DNA from: Pavona decussata
Lineage: Eukaryota
Assembly (NCBI GenBank): GCA_977016875.1
Contig: CDRNST010000112.1
Coordinates: 1,240,001-1,304,000, forward strand
Length of the DNA stretch: 64,000 bases
Reading direction: 5' to 3'
Numbering within the stretch: position 1 is the stretch's first letter; the number at the start of each line of letters is the position of its first letter. The notes under the pieces were generated by a model. That model ran no database searches. It saw only the letters and a program-made list of their open reading frames with translations, and was not told where the DNA came from. Shown here piece by piece: positions 7,960-64,000 of this stretch. A program made the position numbers and the translations under genes.

Positions 7960-8414
7960 CCCATGGTGTTTTTTTGGGTACTCCCGAAAATTTTCGATAG
8001 GGGTGTGTCGCAAAGGTTTTCGAACCCTGATCCTATTTAAGGGTAAAGGAAGGGAAAACGGATACCCTTTTTAAAGACCGAACCCGAAAAATGACACCCT
8101 ATTCAAGGGACCCAAACAACGGCTAGTGTGCACGGATAAACACAAATCTCTATGAAAATCGCTTTTCTAATACTTCAGCGGACACTTCAGTTTTTAAAAA
8201 GCCATTTCTTTTTCGTAAAACGTGGCGCTTACAAGCTTCAATTTAACTGATACAATTTAGGTACCCTATCTAAGGACTAATGCGGGAACGTGTTGATAAA
8301 TGAGGAAAAAAAATAATACCCTATTTATTAAGGACTGAGAACCTTAAAAGCCATACCCTATCTCGCGCACATACCTATATAGCCCATATATAGTAGTACC
8401 CCCTCCCCCCCGGG
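7960..8414. mobile_element. MITE of the CCCGGG(G)nTACT...AGTAC(C)nGGG family
   Basis: Degenerate termini GGGTACTCCC / AGTACCCCCTCCCCCCCGGG with internal ACCCTATTTAAG repeats; same architecture as 10673-11060. Confidence 0.55.
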
Positions 8415-32416: not shown

Positions 32417-35400
32417 TTACATGTATAAATCATAAAGAGACATAATATAGAGACTTTTCTCCAAATCGCCTTCTGTCGTGTCCTGCCAACTGTAGAAGGT
32501 AACCTGAAATACAGAATAACACGACACAATTCAGAGAAAGATAAAAGTCCTGATAATGCATTGCCCGATCAGTATATATATTTTTTAATCCGTTTGTTGT
32601 CCATTTGTGAGCCCTATTAGTGCAAGCTCCCCAATGTATTCCATGTATTTCAGCAAAGAAACGTACTCAAGTATTTTCTGCAGTTTTGGCAAAATACAGC
32701 AAAATTGCCACAATACCACCTCATTAAGGGGGTTATCTCTCTCAGAGAGACGTTTAATCGAGAACGTTGCGAGTTGTTCATTGTTTGAAACTTTAATCGA
32801 CGAATCGACGTCAAACTTGACACGAAGTATATAAACATAATTACATACCACCTTGGTCGGTTCGGTTAGTAGAAACCCATTCTCCGAGAAACGGCCGCGG
32901 ACATCTTTGGCGACTAACCACACAAAGCAAGCAGGAGACTGGGCCTGAATAGACACGCTGAACTCTGTTTTGGACAACTGGGAAACTTTTAAAACCTGAA
33001 AAATGGACCACATCGTCATATTCATTGGTGCTCAAACAAAATCGACGTACGGACACAAGAGGGGCCTGTTCTGACGATCTCACCGTCAGCTGTATAAATC
33101 ACAATGTAGTAAATAACAAACCAACATTATTATTCAACACTGCCCAAATATTGTCATGGTGCACTCAATATTCGTCGTCCGCTGTCAATAGATATCCTGC
33201 GATATACGTAATTTCGTGTGTCGGGGAAAAAAATTGCAAAATATAGATCGTCTCCAGCTTTTCTGCAATAAAAGTGTGCTTCGTTATCAATGTGTTGAAT
33301 AATAAAACAATTATCCTGCTCAATCTTGCGGAATATCCTCTGATTTTAGTCAATTCGGCCTACGGCCTCGTCGGCTAAGTATCAGGCGATATATACATCT
33401 GAAGAAATCCTATTTTTTTAAATTCCAGTCATGCTCAAAGGATTGGAAACTTGTATGTTATTGATATTTTCTATGGTGATGAAAATCTGAAGTAGATTTA
33501 TTTCGTAGGACGCAAGTCTTGTAAATTAAAATTAAAAAATTAAAGAGAAATGTTTCCGAGAGCTTTGACCTGTAACTGAGGCTCTTTTAAGCCGACGGCT
33601 TCTGAAAGGTTGGCTGGGAAGAATACATTCGTCGGTCCCAGGTCCTTCCCGGTGCTCTGGTCCACAGGAGTCATGGTGAAGACACAGTGTCGAGTACTTT
33701 CACATCCCGTTGTTTTTACAAGAGCCTGTAAGTCTTCTGCGTAAATGAGTTTCTATGATAAAACGGGGATATGAAAGTCGGGTTGATTGTTATTGAAAAG
33801 AAATTATTCACACAACGTAACTGCATGATTGAAAAAGATTCCCATCACAAATGGAAAACAAGAAACAAACAAAAAACACAAAACAAAAGAAAAATAAAGA
33901 AAAGAAAAAAGGAAGAAGAAAGACAATGTATAAATCCGTAAAAGAACTTGCTAAACTTTACTACGCCTTTCAATAACATACAGACCCTGAACTTCAACCT
34001 CAACCAACGTTTTTGTTTTCTTAGAGGTAATTGACAGCAGTGAAAAGCGTAACAGTTGCTTGAATCTTGAACTTCGGAGTCCGCATGTTATTGAAAGATA
34101 GCCTCCCACGCAGACGTTCTTAGGGGTTCGTCACGCGCTCCTGTGGGGCAGGAACGCGTGACGAACCCCTAAAAACGTCTGCGTGGGAGGCTAATTGAAA
34201 GACGGAGTAAGCTTGATCTTCTCACCCAGGCGACTTTCGCGTTCGCTCACTGAAGTGTTTCGCCGGCTCAAGCTATCGTGGTTGCATTCCGGGATTTTAC
34301 GGTTTGTAAGTTGCTTTTGGTCACATTTTAATGACAAATGTCAATCAAAGAAATGTACCCCAAAATGTTAATTCAGCATACGTGCCACTTGTTACTTACT
34401 GATGATTGACGATCAATGTTGAATGTGACGCTCTTGCTGTACAGCGGATTGAAAGAAGACCAACCCCAGCCCTTTAGAGAGACTGCACCTTCTGTAATGG
34501 GCTGAAAACGAACAAACAGAAAAATAGGTCAAGTAGAGCGGCTTTCATTTAACTTTTGACCAGTTCTCGTCCTGCGTGCGTCTGTTATGACTGGCGAAAG
34601 TGAACCTTTCGATGAGTTTATATGTGAAAGCGGACTAGGCCTGTTACAGATCTCGGGTTTTGCTGGAAATTATCACACACGAACAATTTATCCCGGTTAC
34701 CGGGCGGAAGAGCTCTTACAAATGCAGGTAGTAGAGGATTCTATGGTTTGTTTCTGTGATCGCTGAGATCAGAATAACTGCTATTAATTGTCGATCGAAG
34801 AAAAGTTACAAAATGTTTCAAGCTTACAGCACCGAGGTACACTAGAAGACGTTCCTGGTTGGCCAAATACTTGTTCCCTAAATTTCAATACATTCTTTCT
34901 GCTGGAACCATTTTGCGCTCGATAACTTCAAATAAAAAGAACCGGGATGAAACTCATTTCAGTGAACCGAGCTAGCCAGCCGGACTCATGTGACCACCCC
35001 TCTTAGGGGCCGATTGCACGAACCGGGCTGGGCCGGTTCTTATGCATAAATCGCAACCTTGATTTTTGTTTTGTTTAACAGACATGCCGAGATCTCGGCA
35101 AACCGGGCCAGCCTGTAATCACGCCTCTTAGGGTTCCGTATTTAAAATGCAGTGGTCAATTCAGCAAAACGTTTACACTTGTAGGTAACTGTCAGGGCCC
35201 TTTACACGCGCTTGCAGAAAACGAGTTAAATTTAATATTATTAGCTTTCTTAAACGATGATTGTTAAATTAGTTTTTGAACTTTTGTTAAGTTCTTACTT
35301 GTATTTGCTTGTAAAAGAAAAGGACCTAACTTGTAAATTACAAGTGTAAAAGTTTTATTAAATTAGCTTGAGGTTAACGCTTGGTCAGAAAAGACAAAGC

Positions 35401-48500: not shown

Positions 48501-51500
48501 CAACGGCGAACGAGACCAGTTTCACGAAGTGGTGTTACACGGTGAAACTCTTGTTTTTTCACCACTGCGACCGTTGCGAGCCGTTGCAGAAGTAGAAAGC
48601 GGTTCTACTTTTCGAGAAACTTGTCTCGCAACGGAAGTTCGAAAAAGTTTCACGAAACCGATCATGTTACACGGTGCAACGCCTGCTGAAACTTTTCAGC
48701 TAAAAGTTTCAACGTGAAACGGCGGCTTTAGCCTGTTCTTCTGTGTATCGTGAAATTCTGAAAGTGTGACCTTTCAAGTGAAAGCTAGGAAGTGAAAGCT
48801 ATTAAGTTTTCTGCGGCGCCATACGTTGCACATAGGCTGTATATAATGCGGCTCTCACTATTGAGTCTATGATCAAAATCTTTTAGCGTAGCTGTTCAAA
48901 TGAATGTTATTGAGCAGTCCTTTCCTGTAATGCTGTTCACTGTGTTTTCAGGGTGTTAAAACTTTAGAGTCTTTGGTATAAACTGTAATCTATGAGCTAC
49001 CAAGCAGAACCTTCCTTAATCGCCGTGGCAAAAGTTCGAGTCTCGTTTAAGCTCAACGTTTTTAAGACTCCCCAACCCGTAACTTGAAGAACCCGTCCCA
49101 ACATTGCAATCAACGGTTGGGAGGCTAAACAAAGATATCAGGTCGGCCTAAGAATAGGAAACAGAATTTGGGCTAAAAACCGTACAAATTAACCAGACAG
49201 CAGTTTACTGATTGTTCCACTTAAGTAAAGTCGCGGAAATTGAGGTTCCAAGAAAATAATGGAAATTTTAAGTGCGATTTGCTCACAATATAAACTACCA
49301 ACTAGCCTGTGAACAGGCTCCCGTAGCCGGATAGGGCGAAGGAAATGGCGAAGGAAAAGGCCGCGAGCGAAGCGAGCCGAGTGAAGCTGGCCGAGGGGGT
49401 CCCTCCTCCCCCCTAGTCCTCCCTCGGCCAGCTCCCCTCTCGGCACAGTTTTCCCCCGGCTCGCTTCGCTCGCGGTGTTTTCTTTCGTCCTATCCCCTAC
49501 CGTAGCCTGTTCACAGGCTAACTACCAACGATTTTCGTTGATTTCGTTTTTTTCCTCAATTCGTTTTGATTGTGAGTTTCAGATGCTGTACAGCGGTGAG
49601 AGAAACTCGCACGCAACATCACCACAAAACACATCAAATTTCAAATATCCCTTGGGTGATCCCCAAGGTAACTTTCATGAATGCTGGCATCGCATGCGCT
49701 CTGCACCCACCGCCGTACAACAATTCAAACCCAGCAATCAAACCGCCATGAAAATTACCGAAAATCACCGGTAGTTTACGCGATCAAGCGATCCGAAATT
49801 GCACTTAAAAGCAGCGCAAGAAAGCGCCCAAACATTACAGCAGAAATCATGTGTCGACTGCCCATATCAGCCGTTAGAAGGAATAAGCGAGCTTTTACCT
49901 GCACTGATTCATTCTGAAAACGTCTGTAGTGTTCAGTCTCCATCTTCATGCACTGAGCTTGTGTCACCTATCAACAAAAGTGTTTAATACCTTACTACAC
50001 TAATACTTTAATACGTTTAATGTCACCATGATCTGAAGTCAGTTATATTTTATTATGAGTCTTATAGTGCTGAGTATGACGTACATTTTGTACCTCATGG
50101 TGTTTAAAGGAAACCTCCACTCCGACAACAAATTGACGGTAAGAGAAAGAAAGAGTATCTAAATTCTAAATTTTAGTTTCAAAGTAGAAATAACATTCAA
50201 GTGCGCAAAAAATTAGATATGATTATCGCCTATTTTCGATTTTAAATTTCCCCGGCGCCGCCATTTTGGATTTCATGACGTCATACGGTTGCCGCCATTG
50301 TCAGCAAGCAGAACTTCAAAAGAACAACCGTATTACGTCATGAAATCCCAGATGGCGGCGCCCAAGAAATTTGATATGAAAAATAGGCGATAATCAATTT
50401 CTGTTTATGTTCGACACAGAAATATTATTTCCATGTTTTCCATCGAAATTTGAAATTAGATTGTATCTTCAACAATTTTACGTTAATTTATTTCAAGAGT
50501 GGAGGTTTCCTTTGACAAAGTATCCCTTTTAATAACTTCTCCCCAGTACTTTTATAAGAGAAGTATGGAAACAAGATAGGAGAATTTGTTCTTTGATATT
50601 AGGGATTAAAGGGTTAACTAGTAATCACCAACGAGAGGTTCAAGTTTGTGTTTTACGTTTGTTCGATACAATCTCCCTCCGCATCCATCACGTCGGCTTG
50701 GTCGAAATTCTTCGTTCGCGATCTCGAAGAACTTCTAAAAAAAGAAACGCGGTGAAGAGATTGAATGGTCCACTGTGTTCATACCTGAGTAAGAAATAGA
50801 GTATCCTTGTATTTCTTCAGGGAATCTAACGAATTGGGCAATTTAAAGTGCTTACTCGCTTGATCCAACATCTGTTCATTACCTGCGGTACAAAAGAGGG
50901 AAGCCTTGATGATAGCTCAAACCGTAACCTCAACAACAACTCAGCCAATTCGTAATAATATCATTTTTTTTTTAATTTATTTTTGTTTTTCGTTCATTTA
51001 ATTCTTAATCCTCACTAGTTGTGAAATCGTACCACGTCCTTTACATGACCCATACGCGGTTTACATTTCAAATTCCAAGGTAGACAGCCCAGTAACTATC
51101 ATGGGTCTCTTGGTCTCTTTGATCTTTTTGAACAACCGCGGTCACATTTCTTCAACCAAGAGCGCGGGACCAGTCACACACAATTTTATTCTGTGATTGA
51201 GTGTATCGTCGTCATTACACTAACCATTTCCGTGGTGCTGCCGATGATCCATAAATTCACTGTTATATGTCCAGTCCTCCGGTACAGACACCTCAGCTAT
51301 CGTTTCAAAAGACGGGTAGGACTGGAAACCATACTCAGATGCAAAGCGCGGCTTAGGGTAGCCACTCACATTCCAGCAATCCATTTTGTAGTCGTAAAAG
51401 TGCACTGAGAAGAGATGGAATAGAATTTCTCATCAATGGCAATTCTATGAGACGTGCATTGTAAAGGAACAGAGAAACTTTACTACTTTTGTGGGATCAC

Positions 51501-60900: not shown

Positions 60901-63552
60901 CTTCTCACAAAATTGGGGAGGCTATGAACCCTGGGTATCCTGTGCCCCTTCCACAGATCTACCACTTCTACAAACTTACCCAGCTGAATGAACATTGCTC
61001 TTTTCTAATAAAATTTCCATAGCATTCTCCACGCTGTACTGGGACTGGACACTCCGGTGGTACAAGATATGGAGACTTTTTAGCTTGTTGTTTGGCATAG
61101 AAGACGGCAGAAAGGAAGCGTACTTCAACCATGTTCAAACCAGCCTTAAGAGCCTTCTTAATGTCGAAGATGTACCTGTGGAACATGTTTGTTGAGCGAC
61201 CCACAGTGATGCCATTTACAAGAACAGTAGCTACCGTGTCCAGTCCTTCAAAAACCAGGAGAATCTGTCTTTTGGATAATAGGTCCTCAGAAACTGCAAA
61301 AATAAAAATTTACAAAATTAGTGATTAATCATCATATAAGAAACCAATAGGTTGGTAAGTAGCTCAGGTGTATTTGCATGACGCAGCTAAAACCATTGTT
61401 AATTAGGTTAATTTGCCATTATTGGTTGAAAAAAAGGAGATACTCAAATTTTAAGTTAGTAACAGCAGAATGTGAGAACACCTGTTCTGAGTTCATTAGG
61501 TAAAATTTGCAGCATAAGGTATTTTTTTAACTCACTGTAGATTAATAATTTTTCATTTTGGTCAATCGAGGTGGATTCTTTTTTGGAAGTGGAGTATAAC
61601 TAAAGTTAAAACTCAATAAATTAGTGTTCAATAGATGGAAAAAGGCATATAAAAATTTAGACACTTTCTTGGCCTAATTGTCTTTGACAATGACAATATA
61701 TTTTTTGGCTATTTTTCAGCTTATGACTTCTTTTGCACTTCTTTATCACTAATAAAATAATGCAAGTCCCCCCTTCCCCTGTAAAATCTAGATACAAGAC
61801 TTGGTTCTCAAAAACTGAACTCCTTGATAAATTTCTTTGCTTGAAGCAATTCTATTTTTAAGTCCAAAATATTAGTCATGAACTGAACGTCATTTTCTAG
61901 ATGAAATACACTGTACCCATTGAAAGGACACTTATCATACCTTTATCTACCTGTCCAGTACACATGTTAGTTTCCAATATTAGTCTACTAAGGCTAATCA
62001 CATACATAAGACACTTAAAGGGACTATGTCAGCAGGGGGACATGCACAGTAGAGTCCATGCGTTGATAGAACCACTTTGAAATCGTTGGCCCAACTTTGT
62101 CAAATTACCGTCAGAGAGTTCAGGAAGCTGAAGCCCTTTTTATCTGCCTGAATCGCGTTCATCTTCGGAAAGTTAGTTAAATTTTTTATTTACAAACATT
62201 CCTCAATAATTACAGAAGCTGTTTGTCGCAATATTTCTGAAATCGTTTGCTCTGAGCGCTATTAATGTCACTGGTTTTGGACGTAATTTTTCGAGCACAA
62301 GTAGTTTTGCAATTGCAAGGATCGGCATATAAACAAAAGAAACTCACATGTAAGTCATTAGTTATCACCGTATCGGCAAAGGTAAGCTGACCGATAATTT
62401 ACATCAGAAAGCATGATGCCATTTTGATGAAAAGGATTTTTAGAAAAAAAAAATAGGAGAGATGCAGCTGTGCCAGAAAGTGTCCAGTTGTGTTTTGAAC
62501 TTTCCATACTCTCCCTGTATTTTTTCTCGCAAACTATTTTTAGTAGCAGTTCATGGCTGGTTCGCTATACAGACAAAATATGTATGGAAATGTCAAAATA
62601 CAACTAGATGCTTTCTAGCACAGCTACATTCCTCAGTTATTTTCTGTACATTCCTTTGCATAGTGCCTAAAGTTTCCAATTCATGAATTTTCCAGAAGTG
62701 GTGTTTTATGAAAATTATTTGACATCGGATTTCCATACAAACACTGTTATTTCAGACGTGTTTGCCTACTCGTCAAAATGGCTTCGAAAACCGTGATATT
62801 AGACCTGTGGTAAAGATTCTGGGACATGCAGCAAACCTCAGTGATTCATGTACAGTATTTTGTCACATGACAAAGACTTGATCAAATATGGCTGCCAGAT
62901 GGATACCATATTTAATCCAAGAAGCAATATTGTAGCAAGGACGAAAATCAAGTGTTTGTCATATGACAAATACTCCAGAGTCCATAGAACATTTTGCAGC
63001 ATGTCTCATAGTCTTTGCTGCTGTCTGCCATTTTAAATGTCGCTTAGACCTTTGGGATGAGGTTGGAGAAAGCCACTGATACAGTTAAGGTGGTGCAGTA
63101 GTCTAGTGGTTTTAACAGCATGTTGTACGTCAGATCCGAAGGGAACTGGTTCGAGGCCTAACTTCTGTTATGATCCATCAAAAAAAAAAAAAAACTGGAG
63201 ATCTCAAATCTTTATGGCACCAGATTGGTAAGAGTTCTCCTTCATCAAAGGACCTTAAAATAAAATAACATAAACTATTCAAACCTTCAAAAGACCTCGT
63301 GTAGGTCCAGTTGTCGTAAGCTATCCAGCGATATTTGACATCATTGAACCGGAAGTAAGGATCCATGATAGTGCCATTCCGATAAAGTGCCGTGTGTACA
63401 TTTCCGGGGACTTCTCCATAAATACCTAAGCTCTTATTTGCATTGTGAACAATCCAGGTACCTCCTAGGTTAACCTCTATAGCGCTACAAACAATGAAAT
63501 TAAGATGACTAAACGAAAGAGCTACTACAAACATGAAGTGTTTGACGGCCAT
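32417..63552 (-). CDS. MANBA: Lysosomal beta-mannosidase (GH2), 22 coding exons, 889 aa
   Basis: Exons 63552-63285, 61293-60980, 60115-60081, 59545-59478, 58748-58507, 57610-57508, 56919-56851, 56644-56503, 55248-55155, 54392-54313, 53387-53339, 52612-52471, 51404-51225, 50882-50785, 49967-49899, 48372-48338, 36737-36677, 35519-35418, 34501-34400, 33752-33570, 32995-32849 and 32503-32417 join into a 2670-nt open frame. Signal peptide, [22 protein letters not shown] (acid/base), ASEYGFQS (nucleophile), YWQLNSIW. Confidence 0.96.
34099..34193. mobile_element. Hairpin MITE (TAG...CTA) with 9-bp TSD
   Basis: About 39-bp near-perfect inverted arms; TSD ATTGAAAGA at 34090-34098 and 34194-34202. 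Confidence 0.8.
36210..36640 (-). mobile_element. L2/CR1 LINE 3' fragment
   Basis: [11 protein letters not shown]...[22 protein letters not shown]...[10 protein letters not shown] followed by an (ATT)n tail. Confidence 0.8.
37522..37997. repeat. Minisatellite of about 20-bp and 13-bp subunits (TTCCCAGAATCCTAAACGC / TTCCCAGAGTCC)
   Basis: Directly visible imperfect tandem array. Confidence 0.9.
38335..38372 (-). ncRNA. Solo minimal hammerhead-like motif (pLTR remnant of a different Penelope family)
   Basis: On -: GAC TTGAAAA T GACGTT-AGTTC-AACGTC GAAAC GTC GT. Core and 6-bp helix II are intact; helix I is weak. Confidence 0.6.
38600..38689 (+). promoter_or_regulatory. Putative non-coding leader exon of dioxygenase copy 3
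   Basis: AATCGTCTGCTCTTCA motif and donor AAAG|GTATGTTTACTCGT at 38689/38690, as in copies 1 and 2. Confidence 0.6.
39604..39721. repeat. 21-bp tandem repeat (ACTCTCGACTCTCGACAAATC)
   Basis: About 5.5 imperfect units visible. Confidence 0.85.
39895..40130. repeat. GGGAATCTTTAAAA-type imperfect tandem array (probable transposon subterminal repeats)
   Basis: About 12 degenerate 16-17-bp units following GGGAACGGGAAC. Confidence 0.6.
40300..40627. mobile_element. MITE with TTAA TSD (Kolobok-like)
   Basis: TTAA|GGTGGCT ... AGCCGCC|TTAA. Confidence 0.55.
41658..44744 (+). CDS. TauD/TfdA-family Fe(II)/2-oxoglutarate dioxygenase (SyrP/DdaC-like), copy 3, 393 aa, nested in MANBA intron 16
   Basis: Exons 41658-42233, 42962-43168 and 44346-44744 (576/207/399 nt). 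Motifs [31 protein letters not shown] 5 nt after the stop codon. Confidence 0.9.
45776..46103. other. Assembly gap (328 N)
   Basis: Run of n characters. Confidence 1.
46104..46550 (-). mobile_element. L2/CR1 LINE 3' fragment
   Basis: The - strand encodes ...[28 protein letters not shown]..., an ORF2 C-terminal motif. Confidence 0.65.
46680..47800 (-). mobile_element. Degenerate BEL/Pao LTR retrotransposon pol fragments
   Basis: RNase H-like region ([30 protein letters not shown]...SRG, LWW), then the integrase C-terminal part ([25 protein letters not shown]). The integrase core is missing and there are several frameshifts. Confidence 0.8.
47807..48118. repeat. 21-bp minisatellite (GCGACATTGGAGTTTCACAAT)
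   Basis: About 14 imperfect units. Confidence 0.88.
48459..48727. mobile_element. PIF/Harbinger-like MITE
   Basis: About 34-bp TIRs AGCCGCCGTTACACGTTGAAACTTTTAGCTGAAA with TTA TSD. Confidence 0.75.
49303..49520. mobile_element. TAG...CTA MITE with 9-bp TSD
   Basis: TAGCCTGTGAACAGGCT / AGCCTGTTCACAGGCTA; TSD ACTACCAAC on both sides. Confidence 0.8.
50108..50511. mobile_element. Kolobok-like MITE
   Basis: TIRs AGGAAACCTCCACTC / GAGTGGAGGTTTCCT, flanks TTAA / TTGA, and long internal inverted repeats. Confidence 0.65.
52918..53049. repeat. Hairpin-type interspersed repeat
   Basis: GCGTTATTGACCAAGCGTGAGGTCAAGATGGCTGGATA and its near-perfect reverse complement. Confidence 0.7.
54828..54906. repeat. 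(ATTT)n microsatellite
   Basis: Directly visible. Confidence 0.95.
63090..63165 (+). mobile_element. Degenerate tRNA-derived SINE head
   Basis: A-box-like TAGTCTAGTGG (63099-63109) and B-box-like GGTTCGAGGCC (63148-63158); no complete cloverleaf. Confidence 0.4.
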
Positions 63553-63672
63553 CTTGAAAGATCTTGAAATGATCTAATTCCGTGCGCCTGTAAGCATTGT
63601 GGTCAGCGTTTCATAACAGCAAAATGGCGGCAAAATTTTGCTGCGCTTTCAGCTCGTGAAAATGGCTGTAAA
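63553..63672. promoter_or_regulatory. 120-bp interval between divergent MANBA and TERT start codons (probable bidirectional promoter)
   Basis: Divergent ATGs at 63552 (-) and 63673 (+). YY1-type motifs CAAAATGGCGGC (63620-63631) and CAAGATGGCCG at the MANBA start. Confidence 0.7.
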
Positions 63673-64000
63673 ATGGTGGCTAAAAAAGGGAAGGAGAAGA
63701 AAAATCATCTTTGTAATGCTCGCAGAATAATATATTCCTTCTACTTTAAGTCATTTACATTGCTAAGCTACATTCGCAAGGTGAAAAATGACAGATCTGG
63801 AGAAATCATTCAAGATGGCGACCCTGCAGAATACAGACAACTTCTCAAATCAACTATCATAGCAGTTCCTAGAGATCAGTCGGTCACGCCGCCATTCAAG
63901 CCCAGTCACACTCAGTGGTGTACTCTAAAGGAGATCATCAACAGAGTAATCGGGCACTTCTGCCGCTTAAACAAGTCGAACGTTCTTGCTTTTGGCTTTG
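63673..64000 (+). CDS. TERT: Telomerase reverse transcriptase, N-terminal TEN domain (runs off the right edge)
   Basis: Open frame MVAKKGKEKKNHLCNARRIIYSFYFKSFTLLSYIRK...IIQDGDPAEYRQLLKSTIIAVP...QWCTLKEIINRVIGHFCRLNKSNVLAFGF. It matches the recalled vertebrate TERT pattern [22 protein letters not shown]...[29 protein letters not shown]. An in-frame stop lies upstream at 63565-63567. Confidence 0.9.
   Translation, partial: MVAKKGKEKKNHLCNARRIIYSFYFKSFTLLSYIRKVKNDRSGEIIQDGDPAEYRQLLKSTIIAVPRDQSVTPPFKPSHTQWCTLKEIINRVIGHFCRLNKSNVLAFGF

What the first reader, a model, noticed from the sequence alone, without database searches (positions are those of the whole stretch)
63553..64000. TERT, absent from the ORF track, sits head-to-head with MANBA only 120 bp apart
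Seen: an open frame from ATG 63673 to the window edge with TEN-domain hallmarks GDP..YR.L and NVLAFGF; the MANBA ATG is at 63552 on the other strand. Unless there are distant leader exons, both 5' UTRs and core promoters must fit in or overlap 120 bp. Inference: telomerase transcription may be tied to a housekeeping lysosomal gene promoter, a possible mechanism for constitutive somatic telomerase in a long-lived or clonal animal. Human TERT is not next to MANBA, and the intron that human TERT has within this segment is absent here.
Basis: partly seen in the sequence, partly recalled or inferred. Interest (0 to 1): 0.75.

Follow-up and report, generated by a model that had tools for sequence, protein, structure and literature searches.

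The report
Coral TERT and beta-mannosidase share promoter
In this coral the telomerase gene (TERT) really does start 120 bases from a lysosomal beta-mannosidase gene that points the other way. Transcripts of both genes begin inside that short spacer. The layout is kept in many corals and lost in one lineage, so it is a normal two-way promoter with an unusual gene pair, not shown to control telomerase.

Summary
ATG 63673 opens a genuine, single-copy TERT gene. Its TEN domain matches human TERT at E 5e-30, and TRBD, RT and C-terminal exons follow downstream. ATG 63552 on the other strand opens a beta-mannosidase gene of about 30.7 kb; exon 1 matches mouse lysosomal MANBA at E 1e-18.

RNA-derived contigs from three studies show MANBA exon 1 spliced to exon 2 and ending 4-7 nt inside its ATG. 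In two of those studies TERT contigs begin 30-43 nt upstream of the TERT ATG. No leader exon appears, and no contig bridges the 83 bp between the two sets.

Seven coral assemblies from unnamed species keep the head-to-head pair, with spacers of 99 to about 152 bp (TEN identity down to 50%). The spacer holds conserved blocks: an Inr-like TTAGATCA and a TISU/YY1-like start context for MANBA, and GTCAGCG plus AAAATGGCGGC for TERT. One clade has lost the adjacency, and each gene there keeps its own proximal motif.

Best reading: a compact TATA-less bidirectional promoter made of two back-to-back core promoters, ancestral in these corals. The idea that it causes constitutive somatic telomerase is untested, and the lineage that lost the pairing weakens it. 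This is a new member of a known kind, of moderate interest.

The parts
63673..64000 (+). Start of TERT exon 1 (TEN domain). The exon continues beyond the window to about window-equivalent 65958, 762 codons, with no intron.
   Evidence: ORF. Human TERT E 4.8e-30. Pfam TEN_TERT 4e-12. RNA contigs colinear, and the exon 1/exon 2 joint lies at L005 5458/5669. It is the only TEN_TERT match in the genome.
63553..63672 (.). 120-bp spacer between the two start codons: a TATA-less divergent (bidirectional) promoter region that also holds both 5' UTRs.
   Evidence: No RNA contig covers 63547-63629 in any of four runs, while both flanks are covered. Blocks are conserved across 6 loci (alignment A1). The 7-mer GTCAGCG is shared by 5 independent spacers, with 0 of 2000 shuffles matching this, and intron controls share no 6-mer.
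63285..63552 (-). MANBA (beta-mannosidase, GH2) exon 1: signal peptide plus the start of the GH2 N-terminal domain.
   Evidence: PF22666 1.9e-13. Mouse beta-mannosidase 6ddt 1.2e-18. A GT..AG intron joint (L005 793/2785) is seen in 3 runs from 3 studies.
63544..63556 (-). TISU/YY1-like start context of MANBA (CAAGATGGCCGTC on the minus strand). The ATG inside the motif is the start codon.
   Evidence: Read. GCCATnTT is invariant in all six aligned loci. MANBA contigs run out at 63525-63546, which fits a very short 5' UTR. TISU properties are from PMC2518114.
63570..63577 (-). Conserved TGATCTAA (TTAGATCA on the MANBA strand). It is Inr-like (TCATTTC) and is the inferred MANBA transcription start, 10-18 nt before the ATG.
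   Evidence: Present in window, L006, L007, L010, L011 and L013. It is kept as TTAGGTCA just upstream of the MANBA ATG in L014, where TERT is no longer the neighbour. The TSS assignment is inference.
63584..63591 (.). Central conserved block GAGCCTGT (GCGCCTGT here) between the two inferred start sites.
   Evidence: Function unknown. It is not clearly kept by either gene in the lineage where the pair is broken.
63601..63612 (+). Conserved GTCAGCG(G)WTTC block (GTCAGCGTTTCA here). This is the inferred TERT initiator region, 56-93 nt before the TERT ATG in the adjacent loci.
   Evidence: Invariant TCAGCG in all six aligned loci, including the most distant one, L009. Statistics. It stays with TERT, as TTCAGCGGTTAC, in L012 where MANBA is gone. 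TERT contigs begin 27-40 nt downstream of it. The TSS assignment is inference.
63620..63631 (+). YY1/TISU-like CAAAATGGCGGC on the TERT side. Its ATG (63624) opens an 11-codon upstream ORF that ends at 63659.
   Evidence: Exact match. The motif occurs 9 times in the window (up to 1 mismatch) against 1.67 expected. It is conserved in window, L006 and L007 and degenerate in L010 and L011. uORFs are listed.
63662..63730 (+). Second upstream ORF (22 codons), out of frame and overlapping the TERT start codon.
   Evidence: It lies inside both TERT RNA contigs. It is not conserved in all species.
60979..61293 (-). MANBA exon 2 (at least this much of it), joined to exon 1 in RNA contigs.
   Evidence: Joint and contig pieces at L005 479-793.
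32849..32980 (-). MANBA C-terminal Ig_mannosidase exon, which places the 3' part of the gene about 30.7 kb from its ATG.
   Evidence: It is the only PF17753 match in the whole genome, 40.7 bits, on the same strand.

Best explanation
A genuine, expressed, single-copy TERT gene lies head-to-head with a lysosomal-type beta-mannosidase (MANBA) gene. The start codons are 120 bp apart.

Both mRNAs begin inside or at the edge of this spacer. The spacer therefore works as one compact, TATA-less bidirectional promoter built from two back-to-back core promoters:
- MANBA side: an Inr-like TTAGATCA 10-18 nt before a start codon set in a TISU/YY1-type context, which implies a very short 5' UTR.
- TERT side: a conserved GTCAGCG block followed about 20 nt later by a YY1/TISU-like AAAATGGCGGC, then a leader of roughly 45-70 nt that carries short upstream ORFs in several species.

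The two inferred start sites are only about 30-35 bp apart, so they must share one nucleosome-free region. Some co-regulation is therefore likely. Each gene nonetheless has its own core elements and can function without the other. The arrangement is ancestral for a broad set of corals and was lost once in one clade.

Shown: gene identities, spacing, splice joints, contig ends, conservation and the loss. Inferred: the exact start sites, the factor that binds the motifs (YY1-like), and any coupling of expression.
For: - TERT identity.
- MANBA identity and extent.
- RNA: the MANBA exon 1-2 joint appears in runs X1, X2 and X13, from three studies. Introns are uncovered apart from an interspersed repeat in MANBA intron 1, so these are RNA. 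MANBA contigs end at window 63525-63546 and TERT contigs begin at 63630 (X2) and 63643 (X1). No part of any contig is left unaligned upstream, and no contig crosses 63547-63629.
- Conservation: MANBA exon 1 sits immediately upstream and divergent in L006 (108 bp), L007/L008 (116), L010 (114), L011 (121), L013 (99) and L009 (about 152).
- Spacer blocks: conserved. GTCAGCG is shared by five independent spacers, with 0 of 2000 shuffles matching this, and intron controls share no 6-mer.
- Motif-to-gene assignment: in the lineage where the genes are apart, TERT keeps TTCAGCGGTTAC (L012) and MANBA keeps TTAGGTCA plus the AATATGGC start context (L014).
- Motif usage: the YY1-like motif is enriched in the window, 9 against 1.67 expected. 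TISU lies downstream of the TSS, binds YY1 and goes with a median 12-nt 5' UTR (PMC2518114).
Against: - The RNA evidence consists of assembled contigs of low depth (about 5-15). Contigs show neither true 5' ends nor strand, and they drop rare isoforms, so a minor TERT isoform with a distant leader exon is not excluded.
- No CAGE, 5'-RACE or raw reads were available.
- Motif functions are inferred only from conservation and from resemblance to mammalian elements.
- The AAAATGGCGGC block is degenerate in L010, L011 and L013 and absent in L009.
- The root of the TERT tree rests on one long branch.
Confidence: 0.75

Rival explanations
1. TERT transcription is driven by, and obligatorily coupled to, the housekeeping MANBA promoter. 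This coupling would be the mechanism that keeps telomerase on in somatic tissue of long-lived, clonal corals.
For: - The two genes share a spacer of about 120 bp, with inferred start sites about 30 bp apart.
- Both transcripts are assembled in the same three RNA data sets, at contig depths of the same order (depth is a poor measure).
- The arrangement is conserved over large TERT divergence.
- Telomerase activity in coral somatic tissue is reported in the literature cited by PMC10235076.
Against: - One coral clade (P0035-P0037) keeps an intact TERT without MANBA within 10 kb. Its MANBA is preceded by sulfotransferase genes instead, so the coupling is dispensable.
- Each gene has its own conserved core motifs and keeps them after separation.
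- TERT mRNA in Pocillopora varies with the thermal regime (PMC10235076).
- Somatic telomerase is common in invertebrates without this pairing being known.
- Upstream ORFs in the TERT leader point to separate control at translation.
Confidence: 0.15
2. Incidental neighbours. Two fully independent promoters merely abut. The pairing persists only because so short a spacer offers few viable breakpoints and coral gene order changes slowly, so there is no meaningful shared regulation.
For: - Separate gene-specific motifs are retained after the split.
- The pairing was lost once without loss of either gene.
- The central block GAGCCTGT is not clearly retained by either gene in the split lineage.
Against: - Start sites about 30-35 bp apart cannot lie in separate nucleosome-free regions, so some coupling of chromatin opening is expected from general knowledge of divergent promoters.
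- A conserved central block lies between the two starts.
- The spacer length is held at 99 to about 152 bp across all seven loci.
Confidence: 0.25
3. The main TERT promoter lies elsewhere. The contigs that start at 63630/63643 are incomplete, and a non-coding leader exon lies further upstream, within or beyond MANBA.
For: Contigs cannot prove a 5' end. Depth is low (about 5). 79 loose ends were not listed.
Against: - Two independent studies give contigs that end within 13 nt of each other, with nothing left unaligned (records 2 and 18 start at their first letter).
- No joint into the spacer is listed.
- TERT-side promoter-like blocks are conserved right there, and they move with TERT in the split lineage.
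Confidence: 0.07

Closest known systems
Metazoan bidirectional (head-to-head) promoters of protein-coding gene pairs
   Same: Divergent orientation, starts less than 1 kb apart, TATA-less, housekeeping-type motifs, and microsynteny kept over long times. PMC10887517 (abstract listed) describes divergent transcription of housekeeping genes from a common central promoter region, allowing coordinated regulation.
   Different: The partner pair TERT-MANBA was not found in the searched literature. The spacer is at the very short end: 120 bp between ATGs and about 30 bp between inferred start sites. The GC-rich CpG-island character typical of mammalian examples is lacking (spacer GC 0.42).
Human TERT promoter with its antisense transcript
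   Same: The human TERT core promoter also fires in both directions. PMC8698883 reports sense and antisense transcription from the TERT promoter. It is also TATA-less.
   Different: In human the antisense product is a non-coding RNA and the neighbours are other genes. From my own knowledge, CLPTM1L and SLC6A18 flank TERT on 5p15.33, and MANBA is on 4q24. Human TERT has an intron after codon 73, whereas the coral has a single 762-codon first exon. Human somatic TERT is repressed.
[quoted passage not shown]
   Same: The sequence AA(G/A)ATGGCG(G) occurs in one orientation just downstream of each inferred start. On the MANBA side its ATG is the start codon and the leader appears to be under 20 nt, as in the 64% of TISU genes that have a median 12-nt leader. 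[quoted passage not shown]
   Different: On the TERT side the motif's ATG opens a short upstream ORF, not the main ORF. YY1 binding and the distance from the true start site are untested. TISU was defined in mammals, and its use in cnidarians is my inference.
Metazoan TERT genes surveyed by Lai et al. 2017 (PMC5405514)
   Same: Full set of domains (TEN, TRBD, RT, CTE), an intron-containing gene, and a long lineage-specific linker between TEN and TRBD.
   Different: That survey reports no synteny data and includes no scleractinian coral. Here the linker is unusually long, with exon 1 at 762 codons against about 325 residues for TEN plus linker in human (the human figure is from my knowledge).

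Membership tests
TERT (telomerase reverse transcriptase) | N-terminal TEN domain | tested here: met
   PF11474 4e-12. Human TERT structures score E 4.8e-30 over aa 14-196.
TERT (telomerase reverse transcriptase) | Telomerase RNA-binding domain with T motif | tested here: met
   PF12009 5.3e-43 on the next exon. FFYITE...FYYRKPVW can be read.
TERT (telomerase reverse transcriptase) | Reverse-transcriptase motifs A and C with catalytic aspartates | tested here: met
   The ORFs at L002 5552-6097 (..YFVHVDVSHCYESI..) and 8048-8386 (..LLRWVDDFLLIT..) carry them. Pfam RVT_1 matches are only weak, 0.025 and 0.0024, below the cut-off. The motifs were judged by direct reading.
TERT (telomerase reverse transcriptase) | C-terminal extension (thumb) | tested here: met
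   PF21399 1.2e-12 at L002 9098-9475. The remaining C-terminal exons were not mapped.
Beta-mannosidase (MANBA, GH2) | GH2 N-terminal sugar-binding domain, with beta-mannosidase as closest relative | tested here: met
   PF22666 1.9e-13. All 12 PDB hits are beta-mannosidases, and the best is the mouse lysosomal enzyme 6ddt at 1.2e-18.
Beta-mannosidase (MANBA, GH2) | C-terminal mannosidase Ig-like domain in the same gene | tested here: met
   Single genomic PF17753 match, same strand, window 32849-32980. Exon continuity between it and exon 2 was not traced.
Beta-mannosidase (MANBA, GH2) | Catalytic TIM barrel with acid/base and nucleophile glutamates | not tested
Bidirectional promoter gene pair | Divergent genes with start sites less than 1 kb apart and no intervening gene | tested here: met
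   120 bp between the ATGs. RNA contigs of the two genes approach to within 83 bp of each other.
Bidirectional promoter gene pair | Transcription start sites mapped at nucleotide resolution on both strands | not testable with these tools
   Only assembled contigs were available. CAGE or 5'-RACE is needed.
Bidirectional promoter gene pair | Correlated expression of the two genes | tested here: inconclusive
   Both genes are assembled in the same three runs, but contig depth cannot rank expression.
Bidirectional promoter gene pair | Evolutionary conservation of the pairing | tested here: met
   Seven loci keep it and one clade lost it.
TISU / YY1 core-promoter element | Sequence AAGATGGCGGC-like, one orientation, with the ATG used as start codon and a very short leader | tested here: met
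   MANBA side: CAAGATGGCCGTC with the ATG as start codon in all loci, and contigs end at the ATG. TERT side: the sequence matches, but its ATG is not the main start.
TISU / YY1 core-promoter element | Binding by YY1 and position within +30 of the start site | not testable with these tools
   Needs EMSA or ChIP and start-site mapping. The properties are taken from PMC2518114.

The most novel reading that the evidence does not exclude
The TERT-MANBA divergent promoter is kept by selection because it gives TERT a housekeeping-type, always-open promoter in coral somatic and stem-like cells. Short upstream ORFs would then trim the output. The coral clade that broke the pairing would have a measurably different (more restricted or inducible) TERT expression pattern and different telomere dynamics. 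That would make this a natural experiment on how long-lived clonal animals keep telomerase on.
Probability: 0.15. Interest if true: 0.65.

Novelty: new member of a known kind. Interest (0 to 1): 0.4.

Why it matters
How telomerase is kept active in the somatic tissue of long-lived, clonal animals is an open question, and nothing is known about TERT promoters in cnidarians. This locus offers a very small (120 bp), conserved and experimentally tractable TERT promoter. It has candidate elements assigned to each direction, and a natural contrast in a coral clade where the pairing is broken.

Even on the ordinary reading, it supplies exact coordinates for reporter constructs and for CAGE-based checks. 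It also shows that TISU/YY1-type start contexts may operate in corals. It does not show that the pairing explains coral longevity.

Tried and rejected
- **Literature.** A search for TERT plus MANBA plus bidirectional found nothing relevant. The metazoan TERT survey PMC5405514 has no synteny or mannosidase mention.
- **Earlier scan notes.** Nothing on this place and nothing on TERT or beta-mannosidase elsewhere in the genome.
- **Word searches.** Searches with TERT exon 1 (TEN), MANBA exon 1 and the TRBD exon reached only coral-like, unnamed ENA and Logan assemblies plus one plant TERT. No named cnidarian was reached, because full-length annotated proteins fall outside the length window of single-exon queries. 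The taxonomic breadth could therefore not be named.
- **One distant MANBA hit.** P0075 on L015, 43% identity, has a split exon 1 and no detectable TEN upstream. This is inconclusive, because TEN may be too diverged to detect and the contig is short.
- **Big protein search.** All context look-ups were also spent by then.
- **Upstream ORFs.** Tested as a conserved feature and rejected: absent in L013 and L009.
- **High RNA depth in MANBA intron 1.** It looked like a possible hidden RNA gene. It is an interspersed foldback repeat with more than 2000 candidate copies. It gives only a sub-threshold Rfam hit and no tRNA.
- **Bacterial promoter and terminator scan.** Not used; it does not apply to a eukaryote.

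Full report
**What is at the coordinates.** The window is G000:C112:1240001-1304000 of a 602-Mb coral genome. The coral label comes from run labels and from earlier scan notes; the species is not disclosed. From ATG 63673 an open frame runs to the window edge. In the adjoining sequence it continues as one ORF of 769 codons (L002 673-2982). On the other strand, ATG 63552 opens an 89-codon exon. The stretch between them, 63553-63672, is exactly 120 bp.

**TERT is real.**
- Residues 14-196 align with residues 7-189 of human TERT structures at E 4.8e-30. This includes GDPAEYRQLL against [10 protein letters not shown] and an identical NVLAFGF.
- Pfam TEN_TERT scores 4e-12.
- Downstream ORFs carry the RNA-binding domain (PF12009, 5.3e-43), RT motif A (YFVHVDVSHCYESI), RT motif C (LLRWVDDFLLIT) and the C-terminal extension (PF21399, 1.2e-12).
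- The TEN match is the only one in the genome.

**MANBA is real.**
- Exon 1 has a hydrophobic signal peptide and a GH2 N-terminal domain (PF22666, 1.9e-13).
- All twelve solved relatives are beta-mannosidases. The best is the mouse lysosomal enzyme (6ddt, 1.2e-18).
- The only Ig_mannosidase exon in the genome lies on the same strand at window 32849-32980, so the gene spans about 30.7 kb.
- I did not build a joined spliced model of either gene. Exons were searched one at a time by reference.

**RNA evidence (L005 position + 60500 = window position).** Contigs of four public runs were laid on window 60501-66500.
- Runs X1, X2 and X13 come from three studies. In all three, MANBA exon 1 is joined to exon 2 by a GT..AG intron on the minus strand (intron window 61294-63284). 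The unique parts of the introns are uncovered, so these runs are RNA.
- MANBA contigs end at window 63543 (X1), 63525 (X2) and 63546 (X13). The furthest two stop 4-7 nt inside the start codon.
- TERT contigs begin at 63630 (X2) and 63643 (X1), with nothing left unaligned at their ends. They are colinear with the genome through the TEN domain.
- A GT..AG joint (window 65959-66168) links exon 1 to the TRBD exon.
- No contig crosses 63547-63629, and no joint enters the spacer.
- Both mRNAs therefore start in or at the edge of the 120-bp spacer, divergently and apparently without overlap.
- Limits: contigs of depth 5-15 cannot give exact ends, strand or expression levels, and they drop rare isoforms.
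- The metatranscriptome X9 matched only a repeat inside MANBA intron 1.

**The intron claim.** Human TERT intron 1 follows codon 73 (my own knowledge), which corresponds to about coral codon 80, near window 63910. The ORF and the RNA contigs are uninterrupted there. The whole TEN domain and linker, 762 codons, form one exon.

**Conservation.**
- A word search with exon 1 found 38 exon-1-like ORFs of 578-782 aa in unnamed ENA and Logan assemblies, with TEN identity from 98% down to 50%.
- Genomic context shows a divergent MANBA exon 1 immediately upstream of TERT at seven loci. ATG-to-ATG spacers are 120 bp (window), 108 (L006), 116 (L007, with the same protein on L008), 114 (L010), 121 (L011), 99 (L013) and about 152 (L009, TERT ATG inferred).
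- In the clade P0035-P0037 the pairing is gone. L012/L016 has no MANBA exon 1 within 10 kb upstream of TERT.
- On one 1.75-Mb contig of that clade, TERT (P0037) and MANBA (P0066) are both present but more than 10 kb apart, and MANBA is preceded by Sulfotransfer_2 genes. L014 shows the same sulfotransferase neighbours.
- On a TERT exon-1 tree this clade is sister to the 36 rows that contain all the other adjacent loci. The most distant adjacent locus, L009, lies outside both. One loss is the simplest history, although the root rests on a long branch.

**The spacer.** The six spacers were aligned.
- Conserved blocks, left to right on the plus strand, are GCCATnTT (the MANBA start codon), TGATCTAA, GAGCCTGT, GTCAGCG(G)WTTC and AAAATGGCGGCAAAA.
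- GTCAGCG is shared by five independent spacers: 0 of 2000 shuffles reach the observed number of shared 6-mers. Intron controls of 210-300 nt from the same loci share no 6-mer.
- Read on the MANBA strand, TGATCTAA is TTAGATCA, and its TCATTTC fits an initiator consensus. It lies 10-18 nt before the ATG.
- That ATG sits in CAAGATGGCCGTC, a TISU/YY1-type context. TISU lies downstream of the start site, binds YY1, and in 64% of its genes supplies the start codon, with a median leader of 12 nt (PMC2518114). This fits MANBA contigs running out at the ATG.
- On the TERT side, GTCAGCG lies 56-71 nt before the ATG (93 in L009). It is followed about 20 nt later by CAAAATGGCGGC.
- This YY1-like motif is over-represented in the window: 9 matches at up to one mismatch against 1.67 expected.
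- In the lineage where the genes have separated, TERT keeps TTCAGCGGTTAC (L012). MANBA keeps TTAGGTCA and an AATATGGC start (L014). This assigns these blocks to their respective genes.
- No TATA-like sequence is present. Spacer GC is 0.42.

**Upstream ORFs.** If TERT starts upstream of 63624, its leader carries an 11-codon uORF (MAAKFCCAFSS). A 22-codon uORF from 63662 overlaps the TERT ATG out of frame, and this second one lies inside both RNA contigs. Similar uORFs occur in L006, L007, L010, L011 and L012, but none in L013 or L009. This is a frequent feature, not a universal one.

**Interpretation.** The best-supported reading is a compact, TATA-less bidirectional promoter. It consists of two back-to-back core promoters whose inferred starts are about 30-35 bp apart. 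It is ancestral in a broad set of corals.
- Shown: gene identities, spacing, transcript 5' regions, conservation, and one loss.
- Inferred: the exact start sites, the binding factor, and any co-regulation.
- Three points count against a strong form of that idea. One clade has dispensed with the pairing. Each gene has its own core motifs. Pocillopora TERT mRNA varies with the thermal regime (PMC10235076).
- A purely incidental adjacency is also possible. It sits less well with the tight spacer length (99 to about 152 bp in all seven loci) and with the conserved central block.

**Comparison with what is known.** Head-to-head gene pairs with shared promoters are common in animals (PMC10887517; PMC3898825, both listed). 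The human TERT promoter itself fires in both directions, but its antisense product is non-coding (PMC8698883). Human TERT and MANBA are on different chromosomes (my own knowledge). No paper found here reports a TERT-MANBA pair or any cnidarian TERT promoter. I file this as a new member of a known kind.

**Not done.**
- Synteny in named species was not surveyed.
- Start-site mapping and expression correlation were not done.

Noticed in passing
window 61900-62900 (MANBA intron 1), especially 62500-62800: High-copy interspersed repeat with adjacent inverted partial copies (foldback or MITE-like). There are at least 2185 candidate copies in the genome at about 90-92% identity. It draws very large summed RNA contig depth (up to about 33,000 in a coral metatranscriptome) and gives a sub-threshold Rfam hit to a plant miRNA hairpin family (MIR4208, 39 bits against 140).
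   Followed up: partly
window 50257-50370, minus strand (inside the MANBA gene span): Palindromic element carrying inverted copies of the YY1-like motif (AAAATGGCGGC / CAATGGCGGC and GCCGCCATC) and TGACGTCA/TGACGTAA sites. It looks like the 'mirror-symmetric bidirectional promoter' noted elsewhere in this genome (s1-480816) and is probably part of a repeat.
   Followed up: partly
window 63090-63170: A tRNA-like stretch (GGTGGTGCAGTAGTCTAGTGG ... GGTTCGAGGCC) followed by an A-run at 63180-63195. It suggests a tRNA-derived SINE in MANBA intron 1. ARAGORN calls no tRNA.
   Followed up: partly
L012 3870-4000 (TERT upstream in the lineage that lost MANBA): A near-perfect inverted repeat of about 130 bp (GGAGTACGAGGAG...GCACGCGC / GCGCGTGC...CTCGTACTCC) sits exactly where the MANBA side of the spacer would begin, just upstream of the retained TCAGCGG block. 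It may be a footprint of the rearrangement or a small foldback insertion.
   Followed up: no
L014 4800-5000 (MANBA upstream in the lineage that lost TERT): A tandem array of units of about 30 bp (TTTAATTTGCAGCAAC...) replaces the TERT side of the spacer. Sulfotransfer_2 genes lie further upstream, here and on the 1.75-Mb contig of ERZ26168041.
   Followed up: no
L005 4101-5268 (window 64601-65768, TERT linker region), run X2: One 1404-nt contig of depth 220 covers part of TERT exon 1 with 22 differences, then runs on into 236 unrelated letters. It is probably a chimeric contig or another allele joined to an abundant transcript. It is not evidence of high TERT expression.
   Followed up: no
L008 and L010 (both from sample ERZ25067546): One metagenome assembly holds TERT loci of two different corals: one at 38x, and one at 3x that encodes the same TERT exon-1 protein as L007 from another sample. 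The sample is mixed or cross-contaminated.
   Followed up: no
L002 3890-5480 (TERT intron between the TRBD and RT exons), minus-strand ORFs: Long low-complexity repeats read as SQSVSQPASQ... in ORFs. This is a tandem-repeat tract inside a TERT intron.
   Followed up: no
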